A DNA stretch of 64,000 nucleotides from Chrysemys picta bellii (GCF_011386835.1 NC_088791.1:191084001-191148000); one strand, 5' to 3'; positions 27,846 to 59,491 are shown, counted from the stretch's first letter. Translations and numbers: made by a program. The notes: generated by a model not told the origin, from the sequence alone.

Positions 27846-28573
27846 AATAATAATAGACTATAAATAAGATCTCCACAGCAATTGATTTGCTGTCAAATTA
27901 GTGTAGGTTGGCTTTCCAGAAACTAACACATGCAGCTTGTCTTGAGGACATATACTATGTATAGAATTTACTTTGGGTAAATTAATATTTGAAAATTTAA
28001 CTTTGTCACTCAAGAATACAGAATCATCACATAACTGTATGCCATCACCCAATTTGCTATTTTCTCTCACAGACCAAATAAGGAAAGGGGTAAGGCTGCA
28101 TCAGTGGAACACCAAAATATGTGTGTGAGAAAGTGCTTTGGGGATAATATCCCCAAATATCTGCCACAAGGGCAACTGGATTTAGTGCAGCTGATCCGTT
28201 TGTAGTGATGATCTAGTAAAACATTTCCCAAACCAGAGACTGTCTGGCTAGCGCAGCTAAGGCAGAGGCTGACTTTCAGGTTGGGGTTTATTTATTTATC
28301 TGAATTTAGTTTCTGGATTCCGGTCTCCCCGACAAACCTACAGACGCAGGTCAGATCCAGACTTCCTAAGAGCTGGTTTTCCCTCACATGGTCTCTCTGT
28401 AAACACGCTCTGCCCTGTGCGTGACTTTACACAGCTGCTCTCTGTGTGTGCAGCCATCAGCGCACGGAGCCGCGCCGCACCCCCGGCTGCAGCGGTCACC
28501 CGCCGTCTTTCTCTCGCGCACGGGAGGCGCAGGGGAAGTGCGGGGCCTGGTGCGGCGGCGCTGCCTGAGCCCC

Positions 28574-28674
28574 ATGGCGGAGCTCCCACGGGCTGCGGCG
28601 GGCTCGGGCCCGGCCGGAGGCGGCAGGCTCGGGCTCCAGGCGATCACGGCCCCGGATCCCCGGCCTGCGCGGAG
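28574..28674 (+). CDS. Candidate alternative upstream coding first exon of SON (MAELPRAAAGSGPAGGGRLGLQAITAPDPRPARR)
   Basis: CCCATGG start context and consensus donor AG|GTGAGT. Phase 2, so in frame with SON exon 2. No homology support. Confidence 0.3.
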
Positions 28675-29193
28675 GTGAGTGGTGCCGGGCGTGCGGGTCT
28701 CCCGCGGGCGGGCAACCGAGCCCCCGCCGCGCGCCTACAGGCGGACGCGATCCCGGGGCAGCCCCCGCCCGGGCCGAGCCCCATGTACTGCCCCGGTGGG
28801 GGAGGGGAGAGGGATCTACGTTTCATCCCGTGGGTGGAGGGGCAGCGCGGCCCCGCGCCCACCGGCGCCCTGTGTGGATGGGGGGGGGGCGGGAACTCGG
28901 TGCAGTAACATGGCTGCCGGGGCCCATCCTCCTCCCCGGGCACCTGCGGGGGGAGGGGAACGTCCACGGGCCTTCCCCCCCCCCAAGAGAGGCTGCGCTC
29001 TATGGTTCCCTGTGGGGGTAGAGCGGTTGATTGACGTCCCGTCATGCCGCTGGTTCCACAGAGGGCGACCAATGGCGGGAGGGCATAAAGGGAACGCGTC
29101 GGGGGCTGGCCCGTTGCTTCTTGCGCTGGTGCATTGTGGGGTAGTGGAGGACCCGCGTTGCGGATGGAGGGGGAGTCGAGCCGTGGGGCTGTC

Positions 29194-29288
29194 ATGGCGA
29201 CTAACATCGAGCAGATCTTTCGGTCCTTTGTGGTCAGCAAGTTCCGGGAGATCCAGGAGGAGCAGGAACAACAGCAGCAGCTGGGCGG
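29194..29288 (+). CDS. SON: SON exon 1 (MATNIEQIFRSFVVSKFREIQEEQEQQQQLG)
   Basis: Diagnostic SON N-terminus MATNIEQIFRSFVVSKFREIQ; donor GG|gtaacg; phase 2. Confidence 0.97.
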
Positions 29289-29990
29289 GTAACGAGCCGG
29301 CTCGGGGCCGCGGGGAGGCGGAGTGGGACGGGAGCCTAGTGGGAGCGGAGTCGGGGTGGGGGCGGGGAGCGGTGTCCAGGGGGCAGTTGCGGGACGGGGA
29401 CAGTGGGAGGGAGGGTGGGCGCGGGGAGGGATAACTCGGGACAGTTAGGTGGGGGAGGGGCGGCCGTTGCGGGTCACTCGAACATACAGGGCCTGGCCCA
29501 GCGCTCAGCGGCGACATCCGGTTATGGTGCAACCAGGCCGCTGCCCCTCCGGGCGGTCAGTTCTTCAGTGAAAATAACAAGTTTGGATGGGCTAATTTCG
29601 CAATGCTTTGATGCTCCTCAGAACACGTGCACGCTGGTGTGTTTTCAGTCTGAAAAAGAGTGCTTGGTGGGGTGGGTTTTACTCTTTTTTTGGCGAGGGG
29701 AGGGAAGAGGGAAACGAAATTTCTGTGTTGCGAAAAGGCCTGGGATGAAACAGTGAGAAAATATTTTCTTCCCTTTGGCATAGTTCTAGTGACTAACAAA
29801 GTATTTTGTCTAAGAACGCAGTAAGTAAAACAAACTGAAAGATTAATATTTCACTAAAGTGCAAGGCCTCTTCAGGAGGCTAAAGTATTCTTTAGAAGGT
29901 TTGGCTATAAGAAATGTGAATACATTACCTTTAAAAAATAAAAATAAAGCTCGAAATTACTTGAATTTTGTTAATATTTTTCTCGGTTAG

Positions 29991-30157
29991 TGGAAAGGTA
30001 GAAGGCCAGCAGAATGGTGAAACAGTCCCAGCTGAGCAAGCAAACACTTCAGATGACACAGTTACGGGTGCTGGGAGTCTTCAGAATGATCAGATAGTTC
30101 AGAAAATAGAGGAAGTACTGTCTGGGGCCCTTGATACAGAGCTACAGTGTAAATCAG
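29991..30157 (+). CDS. SON: SON exon 2 (GKVEGQQNGE...QIVQKIEEVLSGALDTELQCKS)
   Basis: IVQKIEEVLSG.LDTEL motif; tag| and G|gtaaat; 167 nt. Confidence 0.96.
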
Positions 30158-33004: not shown

Positions 33005-36000
33005 GTGTGGAGGAAGATTCAGTGAAAAATAGCTCTTCATCTACAAAAAGAGGCCCTACTGACGAAGTAGAAGATGAAATTCCAAGAAAAAAATCAAAAA
33101 AGAACAAGAAACACAAAAGCAAGAAGAAGAAGAAGAAAAAGAAGAAGAAAAGGAAGAAAGAAAAAAAACATAAAAAGCAGCCAAAGGAATCAAAATTAAG
33201 TGCACAGTATGGAGAGCATGCAGATTTACAACCTGCTTCTCACTCAAAGACAGAAAAATTGGGCTCAAAGTTGATCACACAGCATGGAGGGCATGCAGAT
33301 TCAGATCTTGCTGGTCAAATGCAGCCAGAAGAATTGGGCACAAAATTGAGTGCAGAGTACATGGGGCATTCAATTAAAAGACTCACACCTCATTTGCTAT
33401 CAGATTCTGAATCATCTGTGGAAAAACTTGGGAGTGAAAAAACAAACTTGGCCTTGACTGATATACACAGTTCAGAAACCAGCAAATTGGATACCCAGGA
33501 AGAAAATACTAGTACAATGAAAATTCAAGAGCAAGCTAAAGTAAAATTATTGGTGAATAAGACTCATGAAAGTATATATCATATAGCTATTAATATGAAT
33601 GCAAAGGGTGGACCTTTACCAGTTAAAGACACTGAAAATGGTACTGTGTCTACCAACAGAACTGGAGTTGCTGGTAAATCTGAAATTGAAAAGGATTTGG
33701 AAGCTATTCCAGCCTCTGAGATAACAGAAGAACTAAAAGATTCAGAAGCTACTCTGAAATCGATGGGCATGGTGGAGGTGAAAGAATTAGAAACAACCTT
33801 AGAATCTGAGGCCATGGCAAAGATTAAATTTTCAGAAGCAATTCTAAAATCTCTGACTATGGCGACTTCAGAGGGTTTGGATGCCCCTCTAGAATCTGTG
33901 GCCATAGCAGAGGTGAAAGCAACTCTAGAATCTGTGGCTGTGACAAATGATTTGGTAGAAACTCCAACATCTGTAGTTGTAATGGAGACGAAAGCTTTGG
34001 AAGGAACCGCAGAATCTGTTGTCATGACAGATATGAAAGGTTTGGAAGCCACTCTAGAAACTGTGGGTGTGTCAGAAGCAAAAAGTTTGGAAGGAGGGCT
34101 TGAATTTGTGACTGTGCCAGATGATTTGGTAGCAACTTCAAAATCTGTGGCCAAGGCAGAGGTGAATGGTTTGGAAGCAATACCAAAATCTGCATCTATG
34201 GGGGAGGTGAAAGGTTCAGAACCTGTTGTGAATGCAAAAGATTTGGAAGCAGCTCTAAAACCTGCAATGGAGAGGAAAGATTTGGAAATAACTCCAGAAT
34301 CTCTACACATGGAGGAGGTGAAAGGTGCAGAAGGAGCCCTAGAATCTGTGGCTATGGCAATAGATTTGGAAGGAACCCTCAAACCTGCTCCTCTGGCAGA
34401 GGCAAAAGATTCAGATGCACCATCACTGTCTCCGCAAATAGAAGATATGAAAGAGTCAAAAGGATTCCTAGAATCTGTGGCCATGGCAAAAGGTCCAGAA
34501 ACAATCCTAGACCCTGCAGGGGTGACAGAGGTGAAAGATTTGCAAGAAATTCCAGAATCGCTGCACATACAGGATATGGAAGCTTTGGAAGCATCCTTAG
34601 AACCTGTGGTCATGACAACAGGTCTGGAAGTGGCTCTAGAACATGTGGCTGTGGCGAAAGGTGCAACTCCACTTTCTATGCAAATGGAAAAAGTGAAAGA
34701 TTTGGAAGGAGCCCTAGTAGAATCTGTGGCAGTGGCAAAAGGTTCAGAAGCAGCCCTAGAACATGTTGTCTTGGCAGAGAATAAAGGTGTGGAACCAACT
34801 TCACTATCTCTGCAAATGGAAGATGTGAAAGATTCGGAAGGAGCTCTAGAATCTGTTGCCATGGAAGAAGGCTCAGAAGCAACCCAAGAACCAGTGACAG
34901 AGGCAAAAGACTTGGAAGCAATCTTAGAATCTGTCTCGGAGGTGAAAGGTTCAGAACCAGCACCTCTGTCTCTGCAGATGGAAGATGTGAAAGGTTCAGA
35001 AGGAGGTGTAAAATCTTTGGCCATGGCAAAAGGTTCAAAACCAACCCTAAAAGCTGTGGCTGTGGGGGAGGGAAGAGGTTCAGAAGCAACTCTGCTGTCT
35101 CTGGAAATGGAGAATGTGAAAGATTCAGAAGGAGCCCTAGAATCTGAGGCCGCGGCAAAAGATTTAGAGGCAACTCTAGAACCGGTGGCAGAGGTGAAAG
35201 ATTCGGAAGCAATGCTTCGGTCTCTGCAAATGGAAGATGTGAAAGAATTAGAAGGAACCCTAGAATCTGTCATGGCGGCAAAAAGTTCGGAAGAAACCCT
35301 AGGGCCTGTGGCCAGGGTGGAGGAGAAAAGTGCAGAAACACCTCCACTATCTCTGCAAATAGAAGATGTGACAGAATCAGAAGGAGTCCTAGAATCTATG
35401 TCTGTGGTGAAGTTGAAGGCTTTGGAAGCAGCCTTTGAGTCCGTAGTCATGGTAGAGGTGAAGGATTTAAATAAACTTGTACAAGCTGAGTCTGAGGTCA
35501 CAACTCAGTTTAAAGATTTGGAAGCAATTCCCAAATTTCTGTGCATGGAGGGAGATTTGGTAATAACTCCAGAATCTGAGACAACATCAGAAGTGAAAAA
35601 CATGGAAATAGTTGGACAATCTGAATCACTGGCAGAAGTGAAAGATTTGGAAACCACCCCAGAATCTGAAGCAGTGGCAGAGTCAAAGGATTCAGAAACA
35701 ACTACAGAAACTCAGGTGCTGATGGAAGTGAAAGATTTGAAAACAATTCCACAATCCCAAGTCATGACAGAAGTAAGTGACTTGAAAATATCTCCACATA
35801 CTGAGGTGGAGGTGATGAAAGATTTTGAAACAGCTACAAAGTCTGATGCCACTATAATAGAGATGGAAGATTCTGAATCAACTCTGGAATCTAGGGCAGT
35901 AGTGGAAGTGAAAGATCCGGAAGCCACACCGGAATCTGAGGCAATGACTGGCATAAAATATTCTAAAAAATGTCTAGAATCTGAGGCCAAGGCAGAGTTG

Positions 36001-39000
36001 AAACATTCAGAAGCTACCCCAGAATCTTTACACCTTACAGACTTGAAAGATTCTGGAAAAACTCCGGGACCTGAGATGATGATGCAAATTAAAGATTCAA
36101 AAACAATTCAAAAATCGGAGCCCGTCACTCTGGTGAAAGATTCTGAAGCTAGTCGAGAATTGCTGCATATAGTGGTAAAAGATTTGCAATCAACTCTAGA
36201 ACCTGAGACTGTGACAGTGGTGAAAGATTTGAAGGAAACTCTAGAGTGTGAGATGGTGGTGGCGAAAGATTTGGAAACAACCCTAAAATCTGAAGTAGTC
36301 ATGGATGTAAAGCATTCTAAGGCTGCTCCAGAATCTTTGTATAAAGCAAAGGTAAAGGATTCAGAAGCAGTTCCAGAATCTCTCTGCTCATCGAAGGTGA
36401 AAGTTCCAGAACCTGCTCTAGAATTGGAGGCGGCAGCAAAAGTGAAAGATTTGAAAGAAACCCTAGAATCTAAGGTCATGGTAGATGTGAAAGATTTGGA
36501 AGCTGCTTCAGAATCTGTGGTCAGGATGAAGGTAAAAGATTTGGAAGAAATTCCAGAACATTGGCAGCCAGTGGATGTGAAAATTTTGGAAGCATCTCTG
36601 GAATCTGAGGAAACAGAAGAAGTAAAATATTCAGAAGCAACTCCAGAAGCGCAGGTGTTGACAGAGACGAAAGATTTGGAAGAAACTCTGGAAACTCTGT
36701 ACACTGCAGAGGTGGAGGAGTTGGAAAAAATTACAGAATCTATGCCAATGGTAGAGGTGAAAGAATCTGAGGCTGTGACGGATCTGAAATTCTCAGCAAC
36801 AACTCTAAAATCTGATAAAACAGTGGAGGTGAAAATTTTGGAAGATACACCAGAATCTTTGACAGTGGAAAAGATACAAAATTCAAAAGCATATGTAGAA
36901 TCTCTGCACACTGAGGAAATGAAAGATTTGGAAGCAGATCTAGAAGCTGAGGCTGCAACAGATCTGAAGGATTTGGAAGAAACTTCAGGCACTGTGCAGG
37001 TGAAATATTCAGAAGCAGTTTTGAAATCTGTGGGCATAGCAGAGAGAAAACATTTGGAAACAACTGTAGAAAGTCCTAATGCAGTGCTAGATTTGGAAAC
37101 AGTTTTAGAATCTCAGCACATTGTGGATCTGAAATTTCCGGAAACTCCTGAGATTCCTGAGTTAACAGTGGAGGTGAAAGATTCTGAAGCAGCTCTAGAA
37201 TCTGAGGCTATTACAGAGGTATTGCGACCTATTCCAGAGTCTGTGGCCACGGTGGAGGTGAAAGATTTGAAAGCAGTTCCAGATTCTCTTCACACAGTAA
37301 ACATGAATAACTTGGAAGCAACTCCAGAATTGGCGGCAGCTGCAAAGGTGAAAGACTTGGAAGCAGCTCCAGAATCTGTGGTGGCAATAGCAGAGGTGAA
37401 GGATTTACAAGCAGCTCCAGAATCGGCAGCAGTGGCGAAAGATTTGGAAGCAGCTCCAGAATATGTGGTGATGCTGGCAGAGGTGAAAGATTCAGAAGTA
37501 GTTCCAGATTCTCTGCATACCATAGATGTGAAAGATTCTAAAACAATTCCAGAATCTGTGGTAGTGGTTTCAGAGGCGAAGGATTCAGAAGCCGCTCCAG
37601 AATCTGTGGCGGCAGTGGCAGAGTTGAAATACTCAGAAACATGTCCAGAATCTGTGGTGGTGACTGCAGAAATGAAAGATTTAGAAGCAGCTCTGAAATC
37701 TGTGATGGTGGCAGAGATGAAGGATTTGAGAGCAGCTCCAAAATCTTTGGCTGTAGAGGTGACAGATTTGGAACCAGCGCCAGATATTCTGCGTCCTGTA
37801 GATGTGAAAGATTCTGGATCAACTACAGAATCTGTGATAGCAGCTGAAGAGGTGACAGATTTGGAAGCCGCTCCAGATTTTCTGCACACTGAAGATGTGA
37901 AAGATTCTGAAAGAACTCCACTATCTGTGGTAGTGGCTGCAGAGGTGAAAGATTCAGAAGCTGCTCCAGAATCTGTTGTGACAGTGGCAGAGTTGAAATA
38001 CTCAGAAACAAGTCCGGAATCTGTGGTGGCTACTGCAGAAATGAAAGATTTAGAAGCCGTTCTGGAATCTGTGGCAGTGGCAGAGGTGAAGGATTTGCAG
38101 GCTGCTTCAGATGCTGTGGTGGCGGTGACAGAGGTGAAAGATTTGAAAGCATCTCCAGAATCTTTGGCAGCGGTGGCAGCAGAAGTGACAGATTTGGAAG
38201 CAGCTCCGGATTTTCTGTGTACTGTAGATGTGAAAGATTCTGGAACAACTGCAGAATCTGTGATAGCAGCTGAAGAGGTGACAGATTTGGAAGCAGCTCC
38301 AGATTTTCTGCACACTGAAGATGTGAAAGATTCTGAAAGAACTCCACAATCTGTGGTAGTGGCTGCAGAGGTGAAAGATTCAGAAGCTGCTCCAGAATCT
38401 GTTGTGACAGTGGCAGAGGTGAAATACTCAGAAACAAGTCCGGAATCTGTGGTGGCTACTGCAGAAATGAAAGATTTAGAAGCCGTTCTGGAATCTGTGG
38501 CAATGGCAGAGGTGAAGGATTTGCAGGCTGCTACAGATGCTGTAGTGGTGGTGGCAGAGGTGAAAGATTTGAAAGCTGTTCCAGTTTCTCTGGTGGCGGT
38601 GGCAGACGTAGAAGAGTCAGAAGGCACTCCAAAATCTGTGGGGGTGGCTGCAGAGATGAAAGATTTGGAAGCAGCTCCAGAATCTGTGGTGACCATGGCA
38701 GAGGTGAAAAATTTGGAAGCACCTCCAGATTCTTGGTATACAGTGTACGTTAAAGATCCAGAAACAACTCAAGAATCTGTGGCAGTGACAGCAGAGGTGA
38801 AGGATTCAGAAGCAACTCCAGCATTTGGGGCGATGGCGGCAGAGGCGAAAAATTCAGAAGCAGCTTCAGAATCTGTGGCAGTAGCGGCAGAGGTGAAGGA
38901 TTTGCAAGCTGCTCCAGATTCTCTGGTGGCAGTGGCAGAGGTAGAAGATTCAGAAGCAGCTAGTGTTTCTCTGCATACTTTAGGTGTGAATGATTCAGAA

Positions 39001-42000
39001 GCAGCTCCAGAATCTGTGGTGGCTATGGCAGAGGTGAAAAATTTGGAAACATCTCCAGATTCTCTGTATACACTGTATGTTAAAGATTCAGAAACTACTC
39101 AAGAATCTGTGACAGTGACAGCAGAGGTGAATGATTCGGAAGCAACTCCAGCATTTGGGCCAGTGGCGGAAGAGGTGAAAAATTTGGGAGTGGCTCCAGT
39201 ATCGGTGGTGGCTGTGGCAGCGGTGGAAGTTTCGGGAGTGGCTCCGGAATTGGTGGTGGTTGTGGCAGAGGCAAAAGATTCCGAAGCGGCTCCAGGATCT
39301 GTGGCAGAAGTGAAGAATGATGATCTTTTTAAAAAAAAGAAAGCACATGAAAAAAGTAACAAGAGTAGTGATAAACATAAACAAGATGCAAAGAAATTAA
39401 AAAGGAGTAAATCTAAATCTCTTTCACGATCCAGGAAGCGGAAAAAAAAGTCCAGGTCACGTTCTGTTTCTAAACATTTGAAATATAAAAGAGCAAGGTC
39501 TAGGAGCAGAAACTACTCAGATTCCAGAAAGAACCATTCCACATCTTATGACAAGTCTAGATCCAGATCTGTGGAAAAAAGAGGGGGCAAAGACTCTTCC
39601 TGGAGGTCCAGACGCAGGCGCTCCAGGTCCTCTGATGGTCTCAAGTCAAGATCCAGATCCATTGATAAAAGGGAAGGCAAAGACTCTTCCTGGAGGTCTA
39701 GACGCAGGCGCTCCAGGTCCTCTGATCGTCTCAAGTCTAAATCCAGATCTGTTGAAAAAAGAGAGGGCAAAGATTCTTCACGGAGGTCTAGACGCAGACG
39801 CTCCAGGTCCTCTGATCGCCTCAAGTCTAGATCCCGATCTGTTGAAAAAAGAGAGCGCAAAGATTCTTCACGGAGGTCTAGACGCAGACGCTCCAAGTCC
39901 TTGGATCGTCTCAAGTCTAGATCCAGATCTGTTGAGAAAAAAGGGCACAAAGACTCTTCCTGGAGGTCCAGACGCAGACGCTCCAAGTCCTCTGATCGTC
40001 TCAAGTCTAGATCCAGATCTGTTGAAAAAAGAGAGCGCAAAGAGTCTTCACGGAGGTCTAGGCGCAGACGCTCCAAATCCTCTGATCGTTTCAAGTCCAG
40101 ATCCAGATCCAGATCTTTTGAAAAAAGAGGTGGCAAAGAATCTTCCTGGTGGTCCAGACGCAGACGCTCCAAGTCCTCTGATCGTTTCAAGTCCAGATCC
40201 AGATCCAGATCGGTTGAAAAAAGAGGTGGCAAAGAATCTTCCTGGAGGTCTAGACGCAGACGCTCCAAATCCTCTGATCGTCTCAAATCAAAATCCAGAT
40301 CCAGATCTGTTGAAAAAAGAGGTGGCAAAGAATCTTCCTGGAGGTCTAGACGCAGACGCTCCAAGTCCTCTGATCGTCTCAAATCAAAATCCAGATCCAG
40401 ATCTGTTGAAAAAAGAGGTGGCAAAGAATCTTCCTGGAGGTCCAGACGCAGACGCTCGAAATCCTCTGATCGTCTCAAGTCAAGATCGAGATCTGTTGAA
40501 AAAAGAGGGGGCAGGGACTCTTCATGGCGGTCTAAACGTAGACGTTCCAAGTCCTCGGATCGTCTCAAATCTAGATCCAAATCTGTTGAAAAAAGAGGGG
40601 GCAGAGACTCTTCACGGAGGTCTAAACGTAGACGCTCCAAATCCACCGATCATCGCAAATCTAGATCCAAATCTGTTGAAAAAATAGGTAGTAAAGAGTC
40701 TTCACGGAAGTCGAAACGTAGACGTTCCAAGTCCTCTGATCGTCTCAAATCTAGATCCAAATCTATTGAAAAACTAGGAAGCAAAGCGTCTTCATGGAGG
40801 TCCAGACGCAGATGCTCGAAATCTTTTGATGGTCTAAAGTCTAGATCTAGATCCAAATCTGTTGGAAAAAGACAGAGCAAGGAGTCTTCACAGAGATCTA
40901 GAAGTAAACACTCCAAGTCTTTTGAACATCACAAATCTAGATCCAAATCTGTTGAAAGAATAGAGGTACAGGAACCTTCACGGAGGTCTCGAAGTAGCCA
41001 CTCCAAGTCTTCTGAGCCTCACAAGTCCAGATCCAAATCTGTTGAAGAAATAGAGGTACAGGAACCTTCACAGAGATCTCGAAGTAGCCGCTCCAAGTCT
41101 TCTGAATGTAACAAATCTAGATCCAAATCTGTTGAAGAAATAGAGGCTCAGGAGCCTTCACTGAGGTCTCGAAATAGCCACTCCAAGTCTTCTGAATGTC
41201 ATATGTATAGATCCAAATCTGTTGACGAAATAGTGGTTCAGGAGCCTTCACAGAGGTTTCGAAGTAGCCGCTCCAAGTCCTTGGAACATCAACAATCTAG
41301 ATCCAAATCTGTTGAAGAAATAGAGGGCAAAGAATTGTCACAGAGGTCTCAAAGTAACCGCTTCAAGTTTTCTGAATGTCACGAGTCCAGATCAAAATCT
41401 GTTGAAGAAATAATGGTTCAAGAGCCCGCACAGAGGTCTCGAAGTAGCCGCTCCAAGTCTTCTGAGCCTCACAAGTCCAGATCCACATCTGTTGAAGAAA
41501 TAGAGGCTCAGGAGCCTTCACTGAGGTCTCGAAGTAGCCACTCCAAGTCTTCTGAACGTTGCACGTCTAGATCCAAATCAGTTGAAGAAATAGAGGTGCA
41601 GGAGCCTTTACAGAGGTCTCGAAGTAGCCGCTCCAAATCTTCTGAACATCTCCAGTCTAGATCCAAATCAGTTGAAGAAATAGAGGTGCAGGAGCCTTTA
41701 CAGAGGTCTCAAAGCAGCCGCTCCAAGTCTTCTGAACGTGTCACGTCTAAATCCAAATCTGTTGAAGAAATAGAAGCTCAGGAGCCTGCAGAGAGGTCTC
41801 AAAGGAGCCGCTCTGAGTCTTTGGAACGTCAAATGTCTAGATCCAAATCTGTTGAAAAAGTAGAATGCAAAGATTCTTCACAGAGGTCTCGAAGTAGCCG
41901 CTCCAAGTCTTCTGAACGTGTCACGTCTAAATCCAAATCTGTTGAAGAAATAGAAGCTCAGGAGCCTGCAGAGAGGTCTCAAAGGAGCCGCGCTGAGTCT

Positions 42001-45000
42001 TTGGAACGTCAAATGTCTAGATCCAAATCTGTTGAAAAAGTAGAATGCAAAGATTCTTCACAGAGGTCTCGAAGTAGCCGCTCCAAGTCTTCTGAACGTG
42101 TCACGTCTAAATCCAAATCTGTTGAAGAAATAGAAGCTCAGGAGCCTGCAGAGAGGTCTCAAAGGAGCCCCTCTGAGTCTTTGGAACGTCAAATGTCTAG
42201 ATCCAAATCTGTTGAAAAAGTAGAATGCAAAGATTCTTCACAGAGGTCTCGAAGTAGCCGCTCCAAGTCTTCTGAACGTCACACATCCAGATCCAAATCT
42301 GTTGAAGAAATAGAGGTTGAGGAGCCTTCACAGAGGTCTCGAAGGAGCCGCTCCAAGTCTTCTGAACGTGTCACGTCTAAATCCAAATCTGTTGAAGAAA
42401 TAGAAGCTCAGGAGCCTGCAGAGAAGTCTCGAAGCAGCCGCTCCGAGTCTTCTGAATGTCTCACATCTAGATCCAAATCTGTTGAAGAAATAGAGGTTGA
42501 GGAGCCTTCACAGAGGTCTCGAAGTAGCCGCTCCAAATCTTCTGAACGTCACACATCCAGATCCAATTCTGTTGAAGAAATAGAGGTTGAGGAGCCTTCA
42601 CAGAGGTCTCGAAGGAGCCGCTCCAAGTCTTCTGAACGTCACAAGTCCAGATCCAAATCTGATGAAGAAATGGAGGTTCAGGAGCTTTCACTTAGGTCTC
42701 GAAGTAGCCGCTCCAAGTCTTCTGAACGTGTCACGTCTAAATCCAAATCTGTTGAAGAAATAGAAGCTCAGGAGCCTGCAGAGAGGTCTCAAAGCAGCCG
42801 CTCTGAGTCTTTGGAACGTCAAATGTCTAGATCCAAATCTGTTGAAAAAGTAGAATGCAAAGATTCTTCACAGAGGTCTCGAAGTAGCCGCTCCAAATCT
42901 TCTGAACGTCACACATCCAGATCCAAATCTGTTGAAGAAATAGAGGTTGTGGAGCCTTCACCGAGGTCTCGAAGTAGCCGCTCCAAGTCTTCTGAACGTG
43001 TCAAGTCCAGATCCAAATCTGTTGAAGAAATAGAGGTTCAGGAGCTTTCACAGAGGTCTCGAAGTAGCCGCTCCAAGTCTTCTGAACGTGTCAAGTCCAG
43101 ATCCAAATCTGATGAAGAAATGGAGGTTCAGGAGGTTTCACAGAGGTCTCGAAGTAGCCGCTCCAAATCTTCTGACGGTCACAAGTCCAGATCCAAATCT
43201 GTTGAAGAAATAGAGGTTGCGGAGCCTTCACAGAGGTCTCGAAGTAGCCGCTCCAAGTCTTCTGAACGTCACAAGTCCAGATCCAAATCTGATGAAGAAA
43301 TGGAGGTTCAGGAGCTTTCACAGAGGTCTCAAAGTAGCCGCTCCAAATCTTCTGAACATCGCATGTCTAGATCCACATCTGTTGAAGAAATAGAGGTTGA
43401 GGAGCCTTCACAGAGGTCTCGAAGCAGCCGCCCGGAGTTCTTGGAACGTCAAAAGTCTAGATCCAAATCTGTTGAAAAAGTAGAATGCAAAGATTCTTCA
43501 CAGAGGTCTCGAAGTAGCCGCTCCAAATCTTCTGAACGTCACACATCCAGATCCAAATCTGTTGAAGAAATAGAGGTTGTGGAGCCTTCACCGAGGTCTC
43601 GAAGTAGCCGCTCCAAGTCTTCTGAACGTGTCAAGTCCAGATCCAAATCTGTTGAAGAAGTAGAGGTTGCGGAGCCTTCACCGAGGTCTCGAAGTAGCCG
43701 CTCCAAGTCTTCTGAACGTGTCACGTCTAAATCCAAATCTGTTGAAGAAATAGAAGCTCAGGAGCCTGCAGCGAGGTCTCAAAGCAGCCGCTCTGAGTCT
43801 TTGGAACGTCAAATGTCTAGATCCAAATCTGTTGAAAAAGTAGAATGCAAAGATTCTTCACAGAGGTCTCGAAGCAGCCGCCCGGAGTCCTTGGAACGTC
43901 ACAAGTCCAGATCCAAATCTGATGAAGAAATGGAGGTTCAGGAGCTTTCACTTAGGTCTCGAAGTAGCCGCTCCAAGTCTTCTGAACGTGTCACGTCTAA
44001 ATCCAAATCTGTTGAAGAAATAGAAGCTCAGGAGCCTGTAGAGAGGTCTCAAAGCAGCTGCTCTGAGTCTTTGGAACGTCAAATGTCTAGATCCAAATCT
44101 GTTGAAAAAATAGAGGGCAAAGATTCTTCACCGAGGTCTCGAAGTAGCCGCTCCAAAACTTCTGACAGTCACAAGTCCAGATCCAAATCTGTTGAAGAAG
44201 TAGAGGTTGCGGAGCCTTCACAGAGGTCTCGAAGTAGCCGCTCCAAGTCTTCTGAACGTGACAAGTCCAGATCCAAGTCTGATGAAGAAATGGAGGTTCA
44301 GGAGCTTTCACAGAGGTCTCGAAGTAGCCGCTCCAAATCTTCTGAACATCGCATGTCTAGATCCACATCTGTTGAAGAAATAGAGGTTCAGCAACTTTCA
44401 CAGAGGTCTCGAAGCAGCCGCCCGGAGTCCTTGGAACGTCAAAAGTCTAGATCCAAATCTGTTGAAAAAATAGAGGGCAAAGATTCTTCACCGAGGTCTC
44501 GAAGTAGCCGCTCCAAAACTTCTGACAGTCACAAGTCCAGATCCAAATCTGTTGAAGAAGTAGAGGTTGCGGAGCCTTCACCGAGGTCTCGAAGTAGCCG
44601 CTCCAAGTCTTCTGAACGTGTCAAGTCGAGATCCAAATCTGTTGAAGAAATAGAGGTTGCAGAGCCTTCACAGAGGTCTCGAAGTAGCCGCTCCAAGTCT
44701 TCTGAACGTCACAAGTCCAGATCCAACTCTGTTGAAGAAATAGAGGTTCAGGAGCCTTTACAGAGGTCTCGAAGTAGCCGCTCCAAGTCTTCTGAACGTG
44801 TCAAGTCCAGATCCAAATCTGTTGAAGAAATAGAAGTTGCGGAGCCTTCACAGAGGTCTCGAAGTAGCCGCTCCAAGTCTCCTGAACTTCAAAAGTCCAG
44901 ATCCAAATCTGTTGAAAAAATAAAGGGCAAAGATTCTTCGCAGAGGTCTCGGAGTAGCTGCTCCAAATCTCCTGAACTTCAGAAGTCTAGATCCAAATCT

Positions 45001-45733
45001 GTTGAAAAAATAAAAGGCAAAGATTCTTCACAGAGGTCTCGGAGTAGCCGCTCCAAGTCTCCTGAACTTCAAAAGTCTAGATCGAAATCTGTTGAAAAAA
45101 CAAAGGGCAAAGCGTCTTCACACAGGTCTAGAAGAAAACGCTCCAAATCTTCTGAACGTCACAAGTCTAGGTCCAAATCAGTTGAAAAAGTAGAGGGCAA
45201 AGAGTCTTCACAGAGGTCTAGAAGTAAGCGTTCTAAATCCTCTGAACGCAAACCACAAAAACATGATAGTGAATCGCGGTCTAGACGAAATCGGTCTCGG
45301 TCAGTAACACGTAAAAGACTGTCAAAATCTAAATCTAATCATCGATCTCGGACACGCTCTCTATCACGTTCAAGACACAGAAGGAGGAGTCGGTCAAGAT
45401 CAGTGTCGAAAAGGAGACGGTCTTTATCAAGAGAGAGACACAAAAGATCTCAAAGGAATAGATCAAGGTCTGCTGATAGAAGAAGAAGAAGATCAAACTC
45501 AAGGGATCACCGAATAGTGCTCAGGTTACGGACCAGAAGTCGAACACCTATTCGACGAAAACGGTCTAGGTCAGTGGGAAGAAGACGAAGCTCTAGCAAA
45601 TCACCAGTTCGACTAAGACGATCAAGATCACCTGGGAGAAGAAGATGCTATAGCAGATCACCTGACCGTCAGAGAAGGTCCAGATCATCCGATAAGTTTT
45701 CAAGCAGATCACCTAAACGTCTTACAGACTTAG
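33005..45733 (+). CDS. SON: SON exon 3, giant 12,729-nt internal exon (poly-Lys tract, acidic repeat array, RS repeat array, terminal RS domain)
   Basis: Acceptor poly-T taag| and donor G|gtaagt. Stop-free 4,244-codon ORF, frame-compatible with exons 2 and 4. Starts with a SON-type Lys tract and ends SPVRLRRSR...RSPKRLTDL. Confidence 0.95.
33691..39318 (+). repeat. Degenerate coding tandem array, roughly 120 units of 13-16 aa, consensus about KD(L/S)EA(A/T)PES(V/L)xxxAEV
   Basis: GAGGTGAAAGAT(T/TT)..GAAGCA.CTCCAGAATCTGTG recurs every 39-48 nt. Unit count is estimated from span divided by mean unit length. Confidence 0.9.
39556..45252 (+). repeat. Coding tandem array of 63 units of 90 nt (30 aa; five units of 96 nt), RS/RSKS-rich
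   Basis: The anchor codon of SVE(E/K) falls at 39571, 39661 ... 45181, giving 57 intervals of 90 nt and 5 of 96 nt. Confidence 0.97.
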
Positions 45734-48700
45734 GTAAGTAATGCTCTTCTCGTCAGTCATTTTCATGGCTGAGTAGTGTTGACCTATGTAAACTTTGTTC
45801 TGCCTCTGATGAAGATAATAGAATGAAACCCTAGCATTCATCAGGAATCTCTTCTAAGCAATTGTTTAATTTTAATAACAGACTTTTTGTTGGCATTGAG
45901 TATGCACTTTTAGGGGATTCAAGAGGATTCAAGTGTGTAGTTTGATTGAAAATGCAGCAGAAAAATGTGAAGGGTACAGGATTTTACAGGTTACTCCACA
46001 TAGGCAGACCCCTGCACTCATGATGAACACTGAGGCTATGAGTCTTCAGGTGCAAGTGCACAAGGATTTGCCCACACATTGTAATTGTAGTATCAAGGCC
46101 TTAATGTTTTTGTTAAGATGCAGTGATTCACCAGATTCATTTTTTCCCCAAGAGCATATAGCACATTATTTAAGAAAATGGAAAACAAAATATACATGTG
46201 GGAGTCCTCTACAGTCAGCATAATGTTTCTTTGCCAGTCATATTAATTCTCTTACCTCATTCGCAGCTTCTCTGTTGCTGTTCAAAACTACCTCCTACTT
46301 TATATGAAAACAGGGAGGACTGAGCAAGTAATCTGGTTAACAGAGGATGTGAACTGGAGGATTCATGTGATGCACTCCAAATTTCCATGGGGCTTGAGGA
46401 GGAAAAATCTAGTAACTCTTCCTTACTTACTCCCCTTAGGAGCTGAGCTTCCCTGTATTGAGACTATTTCTTTTAAGTTAGAACCGTTTAAGGATGCTGG
46501 GCTGAAATCACTGAGCATATTGAATAGATCTACTCACTTTGCCACCATGCATAGGTTGTCAGTGTCCCTATATTCTATTCTGTATCATGATTCTATTCGC
46601 TATCACATGGCAATATTTGGATGCAACTAGCTGGTTCCCAAGTTGTTGAGCAGAAATCCATTATGTTAACTACACGTTTCCACATAAGACTGGTGACTGA
46701 GGCAGCCTTAGTCAGAGGCAAGACTCAAGACACCTGGGATGTTATTCCAGATGCTGGAAAGCTGTAATATGGAAGTTCATTTGCTCTTCATTGATTGCTG
46801 CCTGCATCAGGAATGACTTCCAGATCAAGATGTGGAAGACGACTTACCTAGAAATGTGAGGAACTTAAACTCTTTATTGAGGGCATGACCATAACCAAAC
46901 ATCACATATATGATTATAGCACTGAAAACAGCTCTTCAACTGTGTGGCAAGATGCAACAGATTTTGAGACTCTGATATGACTGGGGGGGTATCTCTTTAT
47001 GCAAAAATGGAGACCAACCAAAAATTAAGGCTAAAAACAGTAATATCACACATTGTTTTCTTGGATCCTCTGCCTCTTTCCTGCCACAAGGAGCAGAGCT
47101 TCAATTTAATTTTTATCTTTGGGGAAGAGGAGGAATCCACACTGTGAAGAATTGTAGTGAGGAGTTAATATTTCTTGAGTTTCTTTTTTGCTATTGGTTA
47201 TTAGATGTAATAGTTATTTTGGTAGCTGAAAGAAACTTCAGTATACTCCCACCCTAAAATAAATAAGTCATTTATATATTTTTCTTTGGTTTGTCTGTTC
47301 CTATCCATTCTCCCTGATTTTTGGAATAGTTTTGTTTCTGTTCCTTATGTGTGTGCTTTGCTTCCTGACTTCACCTTGGGCCACATCTTATGCCCCTCAC
47401 TTCACTCCTTTGTCTTTTCCCTCTCTCAGCCACACTACAGGTGCTAGAGTAGCTTTATATTCACGGCATTTGGGGAGGGAGGTAGATTATTAAATTGTTC
47501 CCAACTCCAGCTAGTCTCATTGCCTGAAGAAATGAGACGATGAAGAGTTGAACAGCTCAGCATGCTGCCTTGTCCCACCCATACCACATTGTTGGAGCCA
47601 GTGGAGGGAGAAAATATCCGGAAACAAGAGCTGGTTTAGCATGAGCAGAGATGTAGCCCCTACTCAGTATGTTCAGCTTTCCCTGGGGGAGTGAGAGCAC
47701 TTTTCAGGGAGGTGAGCTTCTGCCGCTGCAGTTTCACTTAAAGCTTCACTTGGAGGCCTTTCTGTAGCTGCAAGCTATGAAGCTGTGTGATCTTTTTCAT
47801 TGCTTAAAAAGTAAGGGGAATCTCATCCTGATATGTGAGGGTTTACCTGTGTAACTCCTTGCTTAAGGTGGTGATACTTCATTTATTTGGTTGTTGCAGG
47901 ATTTTTTGGAAAGTGGTTTGAGTCACAATTATTAGAATACACAGATATGCTTCATGTATTTCCATTACCTGACTCATTTACACATTAGAAGCCACATTTA
48001 TTTTCCGTGAAAAAGCAAAATCTTGTCATGTTTAAAATTTTTTAATATGTAATAATTTTCTTAACAGTTTGAGATATATATTCACAGTGTTTAACCTATG
48101 ACATAAAATGCTTGTTAAATTCCTGATTGTTTTGGTTATAGTCGGTATATTTAATATTGTCCTTTTTAGTTGACTTTCAGTGTTTTGAGATATTATTTCA
48201 AGGAATGGTTTAAAAGTGAGCTGCAAAGGATTTCAGAAAAATTGGGCTTGTGCCCCATTTTTGTTTCTTTATGACTTCTTCTTTCCCCCTCACTTTTACC
48301 TGAGAAATATCAGGAATGTCAACTCTGGTCTTCTATAGTTTTTGTGGGAGTACCTTTTACGTCTTATTGGATGAATATTGTGAACGTTCACCTTAATATA
48401 AGAGGCCATGATGTTGAATCTTTAAACAATGTCTCCAAAATGTTAATTAGTCAATTAAGTTAAATAGGCATTGACCAAAACACACACTCACTCTCTCTCT
48501 CTCTCTTTGGAATTTTAGGTATTCTTAAGGACTTCTTCCCTTCTCAGTTCATGTTTTCTTACTCTTGTAAAGTTTTTGTTTCACTGTTTCTCAAGTCACA
48601 CAGACCTGAATTTCTAAAGTAAAAACCAAGCAGAAAAAACTAACACTTTTTTGGGGGTGGGGGAGGAACCCTTTAGGCCTTTATACACCATAAAGAAGCA

Positions 48701-49729: not shown

Positions 49730-49809
49730 TATATATGTATGTCTATACATATACGTCAGCCTTCAGAAATCTTTAAAGGCCCACTAATTAATATTTAATA
49801 TTCTTATAG

Positions 49810-49973
49810 ACAAGGCCCAGCTACTTGAAATAGCCAAAGCTAATGCAGCTGCCATGTGTGCTAAGGCTGGTGTCCCCTTACCACCAAGCCTACTGCCTAT
49901 TATAGCTCCAGCAAAGAAGGAGGAGAAAGTTACTCAGAAGTCAGCAAGAGATACAATAAAGGAGCTCACTGAG
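49810..49973 (+). CDS. SON: SON exon 4 (DKAQLLEIAKANAAAMCAKAGVPLPPSL...TIKELTE)
   Basis: Diagnostic KAQLLEIAKANAAAMCAKAG; tag| and |gtaagg; 164 nt. Confidence 0.98.
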
Positions 49974-56431: not shown

Positions 56432-57622
56432 AGAACAAAGAGAGAAGTATATTCGTATAGATGAGTTTTTAGAATTTTTTTGGAAGAGAGAGAGAAGGCA
56501 CTGTTCAGGAGTCAAAACTAGATACATTCTTTTTGATGTATTAATTATAATTGTTCTTTATATACATGCTTTCCAAACAATAGCTTACAGTTGTTACTTT
56601 GTATAAATTTAATTGTAGAACTATAGTAAGTTAATTTTATATGTACTTTATATGTTCCTTCGTTCTGTCTTCTCTTTATTTTGGATATACTGTACACTGT
56701 TGAAATCAGTGATACCTGCACACTTGCTCTCTGTTGTTTTTATATTTGTATATTCTGTATAAGCATCACGTGGCAAGATCTAGCTTTGACAGTGCATCTA
56801 GGTCTTGTTTTTCTTGGGCACACAACATTTGATCTTCTGTTTTTGCAGGTTTTATTCCATAACTAAGTATATGTAGCATTCTACGTTGATAGTCCACTTC
56901 AATAAAACACAAGTGCAAAATGTGTCATCTCTGTAACAGAATAGGAATATATTCTCTTCCAGAAGCAAGTAAAGATATGATGATGCTGTTAAATGATACT
57001 TTGAGTTACTTAGTTTTCAGTTTCTTTATTTACCTGCATTTTCCCCATATTTAATGCTTAAACTATATATGTGCCAGAAGATTTAAAAAGCAATCATTTT
57101 AATTGTGTGAGTACAACAAGTATTCCATTAACGTAGTTGAAGCATTTATTTTTATTTTGTGAAACGTCATGATTTTTTAATGTGGGGGGAAGGGTCCAAA
57201 GTCACATCTTGGATTTTTCACAGAGCAATCAATGTTTTCTTCATTCTTTAGAATTAGGCATTTCCTGTATTGTTCTCATCCTCAGCAATAATAATTTTCA
57301 TTTATTTAGCACCTTTACTCCCTAATAATTCTAACACTGTTTATGAACTGAAAGAAAAACTACCCATTTAGGTGTCACTTCACTCATCATATGTGAAACA
57401 AGGATCCAGTCTCAAAATTTTAAATAACATCTTCCCAATTTTTAGTTCAGAGACTGTATCTTTAGAGTTTTAATTTTAATACCAGCTCAGGAGAGAAAAT
57501 TGAAATAGTGTTTGGCACTCAGTGTTCACAAAACCTACAGTAATTGTTTCTATTGAATAGGACCATGTATGCATATTGTGCTTTATCATTTCCTAATCGT
57601 AAAATGCTTCTTTTTCTTTAAG

Positions 57623-57805
57623 ACCACTCCTATCGTAAAACCAGCACCAAAAAATCAGGTAACTTTGACAAAGGAGTTCCCTGTCTCATCTGGGTCTCAA
57701 CACAGGAAAAAGGAAGCTGACAGTGTCTATGGAGAATGGGTTCCAGTTGAGAAAAACAAAGAAGAAAGCAAAGATGATGTTTTCCCCAAACCAGCTCTTG
57801 CACAG
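57623..57805 (+). CDS. SON: SON exon 6 (TTPIVKPAPKNQVTLTKEFPVSSGSQHRKKEADSVYGEWVPVEKN...PALAQ)
   Basis: Diagnostic QVTLTKEFPVSSGSQHRKKEADSVYGEWVPVEK; aag| and |gtaggg; 183 nt. Confidence 0.97.

Positions 57806-59445: not shown

Positions 59446-59491
<46 letters not shown>

What the first reader, a model, noticed from the sequence alone, without database searches (positions are those of the whole stretch)
39556..45252. 63-copy, 30-aa RS-type coding minisatellite with a compositional switch along its length
Seen: a strict 90-nt period, with five 96-nt units that each gain one SR/SK dipeptide and no frameshifts over 5.7 kb. Units 1-14 (to ~40.85 kb) are strongly basic with Trp: SRSRSVEKRGGKESSWRSRRRRSKSSDRLK. 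From ~40.95 to 44.9 kb the same scaffold becomes bipolar: SRSKSVEEIEVQEPSQRSRSSRSKSSERHK. The last units revert to basic (VEKIKGKDSSQ). The human PSRRSRT heptads (recalled) are absent from the terminal RS domain. Inference: hundreds of regularly spaced candidate SRPK/CLK (RS) and CK2-like (SxxE) sites form a tunable phospho-charge polymer whose unit length is constrained while net charge evolves.
Basis: partly seen in the sequence, partly recalled or inferred. Interest (0 to 1): 0.8.

Follow-up and report, generated by a model that had tools for sequence, protein, structure and literature searches.

The report
Turtle SON gene's 63-unit RS repeat
The 5.7-kb repeat is a real, transcribed, in-frame part of the giant exon of SON (the core scaffold protein of nuclear speckles) in what is most likely a turtle. 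Its basic / mixed-charge / basic layout of about 63 thirty-residue units is shared with birds, so it is an old lineage feature rather than a one-off.

Summary
Observation confirmed. Tandem Repeats Finder gives 39551-45248, period 90, 63.0 copies. Parsing gives 58 units of 30 aa and five of 32 aa. The coding frame has no stops; the other five frames have 48-220.

The array lies in a 12.7-kb exon 3 (33005-45733) of SON. Annotated bird and lizard SON proteins match it. The G-patch and dsRBD exons lie 15-26 kb past the window. A tortoise SON fragment is about 99% identical in the terminal RS domain.

In run X1, array contigs have depth 121-205 and the flanking exon 223, against 4.6 for the intron. 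One contig ends exactly at the AG|GTAAGT donor. No joint skips the array.

Main new point: the compositional switch is ancestral.
- Bird SONs have 61-65 blocks of 30 aa in the same layout: about 13 basic, about 45 middle, about 4 basic.
- The bird middle block is acidic and almost free of RS dipeptides.
- Squamates have only 16-20 basic units of about 27 aa.
- Frogs have 11-aa RS repeats instead.

Basic units are under purifying selection (dN/dS 0.26). The middle block is near neutral (0.77) and was recently reshuffled, with exact repeats of 177-205 nt.

The phospho-tunable charge-polymer idea matches published RS-domain concepts and was not tested here. It is a lineage variant of a known protein's disordered domain, of moderate interest.

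The parts
29983..30156 (+). SON exon 2 (approximate ends)
   Evidence: tblastn of chicken SON residues 11-68, 86% identity, E 8e-27
33005..45733 (+). SON giant exon 3 (12,729 nt). Acceptor is ...TTTTTTTTTTAAG|GT at 33004/33005; donor is AG|GTAAGT at 45733/45734.
   Evidence: 4244-codon open frame. Acceptor sequence read, donor. Run X1 contig ends exactly at 45733.
33700..39304 (+). Acidic, degenerate ~16-aa VKDLEA...PESV repeat region of exon 3, the N-terminal disordered part. The start coordinate is approximate.
   Evidence: Translation. TRF 38013-39304, period 48, 27 copies, plus 330- and 426-nt higher-order copies at 80-84%.
39556..45252 (+). The 63-unit, 90-nt (30-aa) RS-type tandem array
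   Evidence: TRF 39551-45248, 63.0 copies, score 5479. Unit table. 0 stops in frame against 48-220 in the other frames.
39568..40947 (+). N-terminal basic block: units 1-14 plus transitional unit 15, phased from SVEK. Includes the five 96-nt units (6-9, 14).
   Evidence: Net charge +9 to +11 per unit. For units 1-14, dN/dS 0.26 (CI 0.14-0.43) and pS 0.32. Near-identical unit types occur in chicken and gecko SON.
40948..44907 (+). Middle mixed-charge ('bipolar') block, units 16-59, a mosaic of subtypes with multi-unit duplicated tracts
   Evidence: Net charge -3 to +6 per unit, 259 RS/SR dipeptides, 51 SxxE/D sites. dN/dS 0.77 (CI 0.43-1.42). Identical unit pairs 26=28, 35=49, 37=44, 38=45, 51=55. 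Exact repeats of 205 nt (42825/43455) and 177 nt (41813/41993).
44908..45267 (+). C-terminal basic block, units 60-63
   Evidence: Net charge +6 to +10; dN/dS 0.36. The Chelonoidis fragment has one 30-aa unit fewer here.
45268..45733 (+). Non-repetitive terminal RS domain of SON, ending ...SPKRLTDL
   Evidence: About 99% identical to the Chelonoidis abingdonii SON fragment P0094. Matches bird, squamate and frog SON at E down to 2e-45.
45734..45739 (+). Exon-3 splice donor GTAAGT
   Evidence: Sequence. In run X1 depth falls from 222.8 in the exon to 4.55 in the intron at this point.
49806..49973 (+). SON exon 4 (approximate ends)
   Evidence: tblastn of the Chelonoidis fragment, 98% identity
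52060..52200 (+). SON exon 5 (approximate 3' end), containing DSDEEEEERPFYNHPFKLNEPKPIFFNLN
   Evidence: tblastn of chicken (88%) and Chelonoidis (90%, counting read-through into the intron)
57617..57805 (+). SON exon 6 (approximate ends), containing TLTKEFPVSSGSQHRKKEADSVYGEWVPVEK
   Evidence: tblastn

Best explanation
**What it is.** The array is the expanded serine/arginine-rich repeat region in the giant exon 3 of SON, the large disordered scaffold protein of nuclear speckles. The animal is most likely a turtle.

**Shown here**
- The array is coding, in frame and present in RNA at exon-level depth.
- It arose by tandem duplication of a 90-nt unit whose basic form (S-V-E-K-x3-K-E-S-S-x-R-S-R-R-R-R-S-[RK]-S-S-D-x2-K-S-R-S-[RK]) is shared by squamates, birds and this species.
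- In the bird and turtle lineage the array has about 61-65 blocks of 30 aa, in a three-part order: about 13-15 strongly basic RS units, about 44-47 middle units, and 3-5 basic units. The non-repetitive terminal RS domain follows.
- The flanking basic blocks are under purifying selection.
- The middle block evolves almost neutrally in sequence. In this lineage it has been reshuffled by recent multi-unit duplication or gene conversion. In birds it has drifted to an acidic, RS-poor composition.
- The 30-aa period and the total number of blocks have stayed nearly constant throughout.

**Inferred from family knowledge, not tested**
- The array is an intrinsically disordered, multivalent RS / mixed-charge domain that contributes to SON's speckle localisation and scaffolding.
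- Its roughly 384 RS/SR dipeptides are likely SRPK/CLK substrates, so its net charge could be set by phosphorylation.
- Selection appears to act on the basic blocks, the overall length and the reading frame, rather than on the exact sequence of the middle units.
For: **Identity as SON**
- Ninety-three homologues, nearly all annotated SON, match the array region at E down to 1.6e-131.
- The N-terminal and terminal RS parts also hit SON.
- G-patch (62 bits, cut-off 22) and DSRM (43.5 bits, cut-off 25.7) exons lie downstream in the same contig.
- A GART exon lies upstream on the opposite strand.

**Transcription**
- In run X1 a 686-nt contig of depth 222.8 ends exactly at 45733, the AG|GTAAGT donor. 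The intron contig has depth 4.55.
- Unique array contigs have depth 121-205. One example is 40413-41012, which spans the basic-to-bipolar switch.
- All 30 bins are covered, and no joints appear in any of four runs from four studies and two organisms.

**Frame**
- 0 stops in frame against 48-220 in the other frames.

**Selection**
- dN/dS is 0.26 (CI 0.14-0.43) for basic units 1-14 and 0.77 (CI 0.43-1.42) for the middle block.

**Turnover**
- Five identical unit pairs, and exact repeats of 177 and 205 nt at lags of 2 and 7 units.
- Four- and five-unit tracts are 94-96% identical at lags of 14 and 11 units.
- One 30-aa unit differs from the Chelonoidis fragment.

**Cross-species layout**
- The span from first to last unit hit is 1900 aa here. 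In 56 birds the median is 1857 aa (IQR 1842-1895). In 34 squamates the median is 480 aa.
- Charge profiles in window, chicken, pigeon and zebra finch all run basic / middle / basic over 61-65 blocks.
- Bird middle blocks keep a lag-30 periodicity (z = 8-28 against shuffles).
- The window's middle-unit HMM finds 7-12 hits in bird middle blocks against 0.2 in shuffles.
- Window and chicken arrays align end to end at 36-38% identity.

**Disorder**
- AlphaFold2 gives mean pLDDT 41 and no secondary structure. Pfam finds nothing in the array.

**Concept and function from the literature**
- RS domains behave as phospho-tunable arginine-rich mixed-charge domains that drive speckle incorporation (bioRxiv 10.1101/771592).
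- SON and SRRM2 are the speckle core, and their lengths vary mainly in their disordered regions (PMC7671692).
- Mouse SON constructs lacking the RS domain failed to rescue SON depletion (bioRxiv 10.64898/2026.03.20.713095).
Against: - There is no protein-level evidence (proteomics or phosphoproteomics) for this species.
- The RNA evidence rests on Logan contigs, which cannot show full-length molecules, rare spliced-out forms or copy number. The RNA label on the runs is a guess, supported only by the exon/intron depth contrast in X1.
- Copy number (63) is taken from the assembly. Exact repeats reach 205 nt, so collapse or expansion in assembly cannot be excluded without spanning long reads.
- The near-neutral dN/dS of the middle block fits a tolerated spacer as well as a composition-selected domain.
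- The match in block number between this species and birds could be coincidence. Only one full array outside birds and squamates was available. No crocodilian or full-length turtle SON appeared in the databases searched.
- The pairwise Nei-Gojobori estimates use non-independent unit pairs and ignore CpG effects.
Confidence: 0.8

Rival explanations
1. The middle block (units 16-59) is a neutral coding minisatellite, a tolerated spacer inside a disordered region. Its frame is kept only because downstream SON domains are essential. Its charge pattern has no function of its own. Only the basic flanks and the terminal RS domain matter.
For: - dN/dS is 0.77, with a CI that includes 1.
- Recent duplication or conversion tracts and a one-unit difference from another turtle show ongoing turnover.
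- Birds changed the block's net charge from about +2 to about -4 per block and lost nearly all RS dipeptides, with no sign that this was not tolerated.
- Squamates lack a middle block altogether.
Against: - The block count stays at 61-65 between this species and 56 birds, and the 30-aa period persists in birds.
- A core motif, E-x-E-V-x-E-P-S, is shared beyond what composition explains.
- Serine content and acidity are retained in both lineages.
- Published work links the length of SON's disordered region and its RS domain to function.
Confidence: 0.3
2. The unit number and higher-order pattern are partly an assembly artefact: a collapsed, expanded or mis-ordered array.
For: - Exact repeats of 177-205 nt, and many units 96-100% identical, are hard to order with short reads.
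- The DNA and RNA runs hold only 60-75% of the sampled 31-mers.
- No spanning read could be examined.
Against: - The laid contigs match at 99% or more, with no insertions, deletions or joints in four runs.
- The frame is perfectly open across 5.7 kb.
- The total length matches independently assembled bird genes.
- The contig is chromosome-scale at 360 Mb, which suggests a long-read assembly.
Confidence: 0.1
3. The array is transcribed but largely removed from mature mRNA, as an internal intron or 'exitron', so most SON protein lacks it.
For: Contigs drop rare variants and cannot show full-length molecules (caveats). Very long repetitive exons are sometimes alternatively processed.
Against: - Array contigs have depth 121-205 and the flanking exon 223, against 4.55 for a true intron in the same run.
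- No joints were seen in four runs.
- Bird RefSeq models include the homologous array in the protein.
- The basic block is under purifying selection.
Confidence: 0.05

Closest known systems
Bird SON orthologues (for example Gallus gallus protein SON isoform X7, P0011, 3724 aa; Patagioenas, Taeniopygia)
   Same: - Same gene, with a giant exon.
- About 61-65 blocks of 30 aa between the acidic N-terminal repeats and the terminal RS domain.
- Same order: basic, then middle, then basic.
- Near-identical basic units, including the Trp variant. Chicken has SVEKRGSRLSSWRSRRRRSRSSDHSKSRSR.
- A shared middle core, E-x-E-V-Q-E-P-S.
   Different: - The bird middle block is net acidic (-1 to -12 per block), has 0-3 RS dipeptides per block, and is much more diverged between units (lag-30 identity 0.2-0.3 against 0.6 here).
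- Birds show positional orthology (chicken and pigeon are 70% identical and collinear), not recent homogenisation.
Squamate SON orthologues (for example Eublepharis, Podarcis, Anolis)
   Same: Same gene and the same basic unit family. In gecko: SVERKEGKESSLRSRRRRSRTSDHHKSRSK.
   Different: They have only about 16-20 units, mostly of 27 aa. All units are basic and there is no middle mixed or acidic block. The array span is 406-577 aa.
Human SON RS domain and its described repeats (PMC3258111; the heptads PSRRSR[TS] are recalled from UniProt P18583)
   Same: It is a large speckle scaffold with lineage-specific tandem repeats, a C-terminal RS domain, a G-patch and a dsRBD. The RS domain is needed for function in mouse cells.
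   Different: - The repeat types differ: 7-, 10- and 11-aa motifs in human. No 30-aa unit array is known to me in mammals.
- No mammalian SON appeared in the three searches, so the human repeats were not compared directly here.
- Frogs have yet another solution, 11-aa RS repeats in three regions.
Arginine-rich mixed-charge domains and RS domains of speckle proteins (Greig et al., bioRxiv 10.1101/771592); SRRM2
   Same: Long, low-complexity R/S/E/D sequence. Net charge, and phosphorylation of RS serines, set speckle incorporation and material state. The window's middle units (R+K 0.23, D+E 0.18, S 0.31) fit this description on composition.
   Different: This is a resemblance in composition and in the protein's known location only. 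No localisation, phosphorylation or condensation assay exists for this array. The regular 30-aa period and three-block order are not features of the published synthetic or human domains.

Membership tests
SON (SON DNA and RNA binding protein) orthologue | Sequence homology to annotated SON across the giant exon | tested here: met
   Array region: 93 hits, nearly all annotated SON, best E 1.6e-131. Exon-3 N-terminus: 44-51% identity to birds. Terminal RS domain: E 2e-45.
SON (SON DNA and RNA binding protein) orthologue | C-terminal G-patch domain in the same gene | tested here: met
   L006:5362-5511, PF01585, 62 bits (cut-off 22), 94% identical to chicken SON. It lies about 15.4 kb past the window's end on the same strand.
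SON (SON DNA and RNA binding protein) orthologue | C-terminal double-stranded RNA-binding motif | tested here: met
   L006:9428-9565, PF14709, 43.5 bits (cut-off 25.7), and PF00035, 26 bits. The second half is at L007:1677-1853.
SON (SON DNA and RNA binding protein) orthologue | Conserved synteny with GART upstream, head to head (recalled from the human locus) | tested here: inconclusive
   A single exon at 2649-2927 on the minus strand matches GARS_C at E 2.4e-7, 31.4 bits, below the 34.8-bit cut-off. A CpG island lies at 28.4-29.5 kb.
RS domain (SR-related protein) | High density of consecutive or near-consecutive RS/SR dipeptides. The published operational rule is S+R at least 0.6 in a 60-aa window with S:R near 1 (10.1101/771592, methods). 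| tested here: inconclusive
   - Basic block: S 0.30 and R 129/460 = 0.28, so S+R is about 0.58, or 0.73 if K is counted.
- Middle block: S 0.31 and R 0.15, so S+R is about 0.46.
- RS/SR dipeptides number 384 in 1900 aa.
- The array is rich in RS dipeptides, but the middle block falls short of the strict composition rule. No window-by-window test was run.
RS domain (SR-related protein) | Phosphorylation by SRPK/CLK kinases and speckle targeting | not testable with these tools
   No phosphoproteome or localisation data for this species. Inference from family knowledge only.
Arginine-rich mixed-charge domain (R-MCD) | Fraction of charged residues at least 0.7, with positive:negative ratio of 1:0.7 to 1:1.3 in a 60-aa window (10.1101/771592, methods) | tested here: not met
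   The middle block has R+K 0.23 and D+E 0.18, giving a charged fraction of 0.41. It could reach the criterion only if phosphoserines are counted, and that was not measured.
Coding minisatellite (in-frame tandem repeat maintained in an exon) | Tandem units with a length that is a multiple of 3, an open frame, transcription, and evidence of unit turnover | tested here: met
   Units of 90 or 96 nt with 0 in-frame stops. RNA contigs. Identical units and a one-unit difference from Chelonoidis.

The most novel reading that the evidence does not exclude
The roughly 63 x 30-aa array is a length- and pattern-selected 'block copolymer' (basic RS, then a negative or negatively chargeable middle, then basic RS). 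It was fixed before turtles and birds split. The middle block exists in two evolutionary states of one function. In turtles it is RS-rich and becomes acidic only when phosphorylated. In birds the negative charge has been hard-wired as Asp/Glu and the RS sites lost. That would be a natural, large-scale case of exchange between phosphosites and acidic residues in a condensate scaffold. It would make the role of phospho-regulation against fixed charge in speckle assembly directly testable by swapping the blocks.
Probability: 0.15. Interest if true: 0.7.

Novelty: new variant of a known kind. Interest (0 to 1): 0.42.

Why it matters
SON is one of the two proteins without which nuclear speckles do not form. 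Its length is known to vary widely between animals, and the reasons are described as unknown (PMC7671692).

This locus, read alongside bird, squamate and frog orthologues, shows how that variation is built. Different tandem units expanded in different lineages: 11 aa in frogs, about 27 aa in squamates, and 30 aa in birds and this turtle.

Within the bird and turtle lineage, three features are kept: the number of blocks, the 30-aa period and the basic / middle / basic order. The sequence, net charge and RS content of the middle block are free to change.

That separates the features of a disordered scaffold that appear constrained (basic RS blocks, length, patterning) from those that do not. It also supplies natural variants for condensate and splicing-rescue experiments. 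It does not reveal a new kind of molecule or mechanism.

Tried and rejected
- **Pfam on both halves of exon 3 and on the terminal RS domain.** No families found. This is uninformative for low-complexity sequence.
- **AlphaFold2 on 362 aa spanning the switch.** pLDDT 41 with no secondary structure. This supports disorder only weakly, because it was a single-sequence run. No fold search was attempted on such a model.
- **The search of earlier findings near the locus.** Nothing returned.
- **Dispersed-satellite idea.** Rejected. Four units searched against the whole 2.37-Gb assembly hit only this array.
- **Exhaustive representative search with 1200 aa of the middle block.** Only 10 proteins at E <= 0.001. 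The useful hit was the Chelonoidis fragment. The others (crayfish 'hemagglutinin-like', a polychaete protein) are composition matches and were set aside.
- **The repeat finder with 300-nt families.** It only restated the 90-nt period. The higher-order structure was obtained from a unit identity matrix and an exact-repeat scan instead.
- **Zero depth at 45260-45659 in runs X2, X3 and X12.** I do not read this as absence. The tool filters human-like contigs, and this is the most conserved RS stretch.
- **Seven single-base differences in the runs.** Three are synonymous and four non-synonymous, too few to test selection.
- **Species identity.** Organism names are coded. The turtle assignment rests on about 99% identity to a Chelonoidis fragment in the terminal RS domain and 98% in exon 4. 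A crocodilian cannot be formally excluded.
- **No full-length turtle, crocodilian or mammalian SON** appeared in any of the three word-indexed searches. Statements about those groups are therefore limited.
Full report
**1. The observation**

Tandem Repeats Finder reports a single array at 39551-45248: period 90, 63.0 copies, 83% matches, score 5479. It lies in one open frame of 4244 codons, 33007-45741 on the plus strand.

Splitting the translation at the S-V-E-K anchor gives 63 units. Fifty-eight are 30 aa. Five are 32 aa (units 6, 7, 8, 9, 14), each with one extra SR/SK dipeptide. Over the array the coding frame has no stop codon; the other five frames have 48-220.

The composition along the array is as follows.
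- Units 1-14 are strongly basic (+9 to +11 each) and carry ten Trp residues.
- Unit 15 is transitional.
- Units 16-59 have the consensus SVEEIEVQEPSQRSRSSRSKSSERHKSRSK and net charge -3 to +6.
- Units 60-63 are basic again.

- The middle block is a mosaic. Eight units are a K-rich VEK[VI]E[CG]KDSS type.
- CK2-like S-x-x-E/D sites number 51, not hundreds. RS/SR dipeptides number 384.

The 90-nt unit is not a dispersed satellite. In the 2.37-Gb assembly it occurs only here.

**2. The gene**

The region belongs to SON.
- The array region hits 93 proteins, nearly all annotated 'protein SON' from birds and squamates, with E down to 1.6e-131.
- The start of the exon and the terminal RS domain also hit SON.
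- Exon 2 is at about 29983-30156.
- Exon 3 runs from the acceptor at 33004/33005 to the AG|GTAAGT donor at 45733/45734.
- Exons 4-6 are at about 49.8, 52.1 and 57.6 kb.
- The G-patch (62 bits) and dsRBD (43.5 bits) exons lie 15-26 kb beyond the window on the same contig.
- A GART exon lies upstream on the opposite strand.

A 613-aa Chelonoidis abingdonii fragment (P0094) is about 99% identical in the terminal RS domain and 98% identical in exon 4, with near-identical matches in exons 5 and 6. It carries the same unit types. The window is therefore most probably from a turtle.

**3. Is it expressed?**

Nineteen public runs from six studies and two coded organisms hold 60-75% of the array's sampled 31-mers. 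Fourteen of them have only 34-218 Mb of contigs, which is transcriptome-sized.

I laid four runs on 39860-45859.
- In run X1 a 686-nt contig of depth 222.8 ends exactly at 45733, the last exon base.
- The contig that continues into the intron has depth 4.55. This 49-fold step is what RNA gives, not DNA.
- Unique array contigs in the same run have depth 121-205. One example is 40413-41012, which crosses the basic-to-bipolar switch.
- All 30 bins are covered.
- No run shows a joint, insertion or deletion.

Contigs cannot prove full-length inclusion. The simplest reading is that the array is retained in mature SON mRNA.

**4. What the units say about selection**

Pairwise Nei-Gojobori estimates give:

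| Block | pS | pN | dN/dS | 95% CI (codon bootstrap) |
|---|---|---|---|---|
| Basic units 1-14 | 0.32 | 0.10 | 0.26 | 0.14-0.43 |
| Middle units 16-59 | 0.20 | 0.16 | 0.77 | 0.43-1.42 |
| End units 60-63 | not recorded | not recorded | 0.36 | not computed |

The middle-block value is 0.72 after near-duplicate units are removed.

The basic block is old at silent sites and constrained at the protein level. The middle block cannot be distinguished from neutral sequence evolution. The absence of frameshifts is therefore weak evidence for a function of the array itself, because any frameshift would also delete the essential C-terminal parts of SON.

The middle block has also been reshuffled recently.
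- Five unit pairs are identical (26=28, 35=49, 37=44, 38=45, 51=55).
- There are exact repeats of 205 nt at a lag of 7 units and 177 nt at a lag of 2 units.
- Four- and five-unit tracts are 94-96% identical at lags of 14 and 11 units.
- The Chelonoidis fragment has exactly one 30-aa unit fewer near units 60/61. Unit number therefore does change between turtles.

**5. Comparison with other animals**

This comparison changes the interpretation most.

*Birds.* Bird SON proteins (3.5-4.0 kaa) have an RS-rich region of about 2150-2250 aa with a 30-aa period. Chicken SON shows the same order as the window:
- about 13 basic units, for example SVEKRGSRLSSWRSRRRRSRSSDHSKSRSR, Trp included;
- then about 45 acidic 30-aa blocks, for example SPDGRESRSTTGEEAEDREPSLTAERRHST;
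- then 4-5 basic units, for example SVEKAADKESSRRSRHRRSRSAARQMSRSV;
- then the terminal RS domain.

*Span of the array.* An HMM built from the window's units measures the span from first to last unit.

| Group | Span |
|---|---|
| This window | 1900 aa |
| 56 birds | median 1857 aa (IQR 1842-1895) |
| 34 squamates | median 480 aa |

*Charge profiles.* Profiles in 30-aa blocks give 63 blocks here, 62 in chicken, 65 in pigeon and 61 in zebra finch. All follow the same basic / middle / basic partition.

*Homology of the middle block.*
- Bird middle blocks keep a lag-30 periodicity, with z = 8-28 against shuffles.
- They are recognised by the window's middle-unit HMM 7-12 times, against 0.2 times in composition-preserving shuffles.
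- The window and chicken arrays align end to end at 36-38% identity.

*What differs in the middle block*.
- Here: 259 RS/SR dipeptides, S 0.31, net charge +75 over 1320 aa.
- Chicken: 37 RS/SR dipeptides, S 0.18, net charge -172 over 1373 aa.

*Other lineages.*
- Squamates have only 16-20 basic units, mostly of 27 aa, and no middle block.
- Frogs have very long SONs (4.4-5.5 kaa) with 11-aa RS repeats and no 30-aa unit.

The compositional switch is thus an ancestral three-part layout of the bird and turtle lineage. Block number and period are conserved, while the middle block's sequence, charge and RS content are free to vary.

**6. How it most likely works**

*Shown.* The array is a coding, transcribed, disordered part of SON (pLDDT 41). 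It has constrained basic RS blocks and a fast-evolving middle.

*Inferred from published work.*
- SON and SRRM2 form the speckle core, and their length changes lie in disordered regions (PMC7671692).
- RS domains behave as phospho-tunable arginine-rich mixed-charge domains. Their net charge governs speckle incorporation and material state (10.1101/771592).
- Mouse SON lacking its RS domain does not rescue SON depletion (10.64898/2026.03.20.713095).

On this basis the array most likely acts as a long multivalent RS / mixed-charge scaffold whose charge is set by SRPK/CLK-type phosphorylation. Nothing here tests it.

The main rival is that the middle block is a tolerated spacer. It is not excluded, and I give it 0.3.

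**7. Novelty and verdict**

The gene, the domain class and the general fact that SON's disordered length varies are all known. Homologous bird arrays sit in public annotations.

I found no description in the searched literature of three things:
- the 30-aa unit;
- its three-block order with about 63 blocks conserved between a turtle and birds;
- the contrast between an RS-rich middle block in the turtle and an acidic one in birds.

I rate this a new variant of a known kind, of moderate interest. The most novel reading still open is that birds hard-wired as Asp/Glu the negative charge that turtles supply by phosphorylation. It is attractive but unsupported by any direct data here.

Noticed in passing
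window 33700-39304 (TRF rows 38013-39304): The first half of SON exon 3 is a second, acidic, degenerate tandem repeat of about 16 aa (VKDLEAAPESVV..AE). TRF gives period 48 nt x 27 copies, with 330- and 426-nt higher-order copies at 80-84% identity. Bird SONs align to this region at 44-51% identity.
   Followed up: partly
window 45734-45741; protein P0062; bird and squamate 'isoform X2' entries: Reading through the exon-3 donor stops after two codons (LTDLGK*). A Logan-derived squamate SON (P0062) ends the same way (LTDLGNKS). Many annotated isoforms lack the G-patch and dsRBD. This suggests a conserved short, intron-retaining SON isoform. In run X1 the intron contig has about 2% of the exon depth.
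   Followed up: no
frog SON proteins P0101-P0119: Frog SON proteins are 4.4-5.5 kaa. They have three separate RS-rich regions with an 11-aa period and no 30-aa unit. This is an independent repeat expansion in the same gene.
   Followed up: partly
window 44818-45090, against P0094 residues 30-75: The Chelonoidis abingdonii SON fragment lacks exactly one 30-aa unit relative to the window near units 60/61. The flanking tail is otherwise about 99% identical. This is an in-frame difference in unit number between turtles.
   Followed up: yes
window 2649-2927 (-), 6006-6281 (-), 28400-29500: GART-like exons lie on the minus strand (GARS_C match at E 2.4e-7 for the first). A CpG island (GC 0.585) lies between GART and SON, consistent with a head-to-head promoter region.
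   Followed up: partly
window 10167-10526 (+) and 12833-13120 (+): Two ORF fragments with a CR1-type reverse-transcriptase C-terminus (…RPQLEYCVQFW.PH.RKD.DKLE.VQRRATKMIKGLE…) lie in the intergenic or intronic region upstream of SON. Pfam gave no hit for the first.
   Followed up: partly
window 3087-4373 (-): A 428-aa Pro/Ser/Arg-rich open frame lies in a GC-rich stretch (GC 0.52) with overlapping ORFs on both strands. It has no Pfam match and its nature is unknown.
   Followed up: partly
window 59440-59510: A (CA)n/(TG)n microsatellite lies in a SON intron. It shows up as the HTHTHTHT and CVCVCVCV ORF translations.
   Followed up: no
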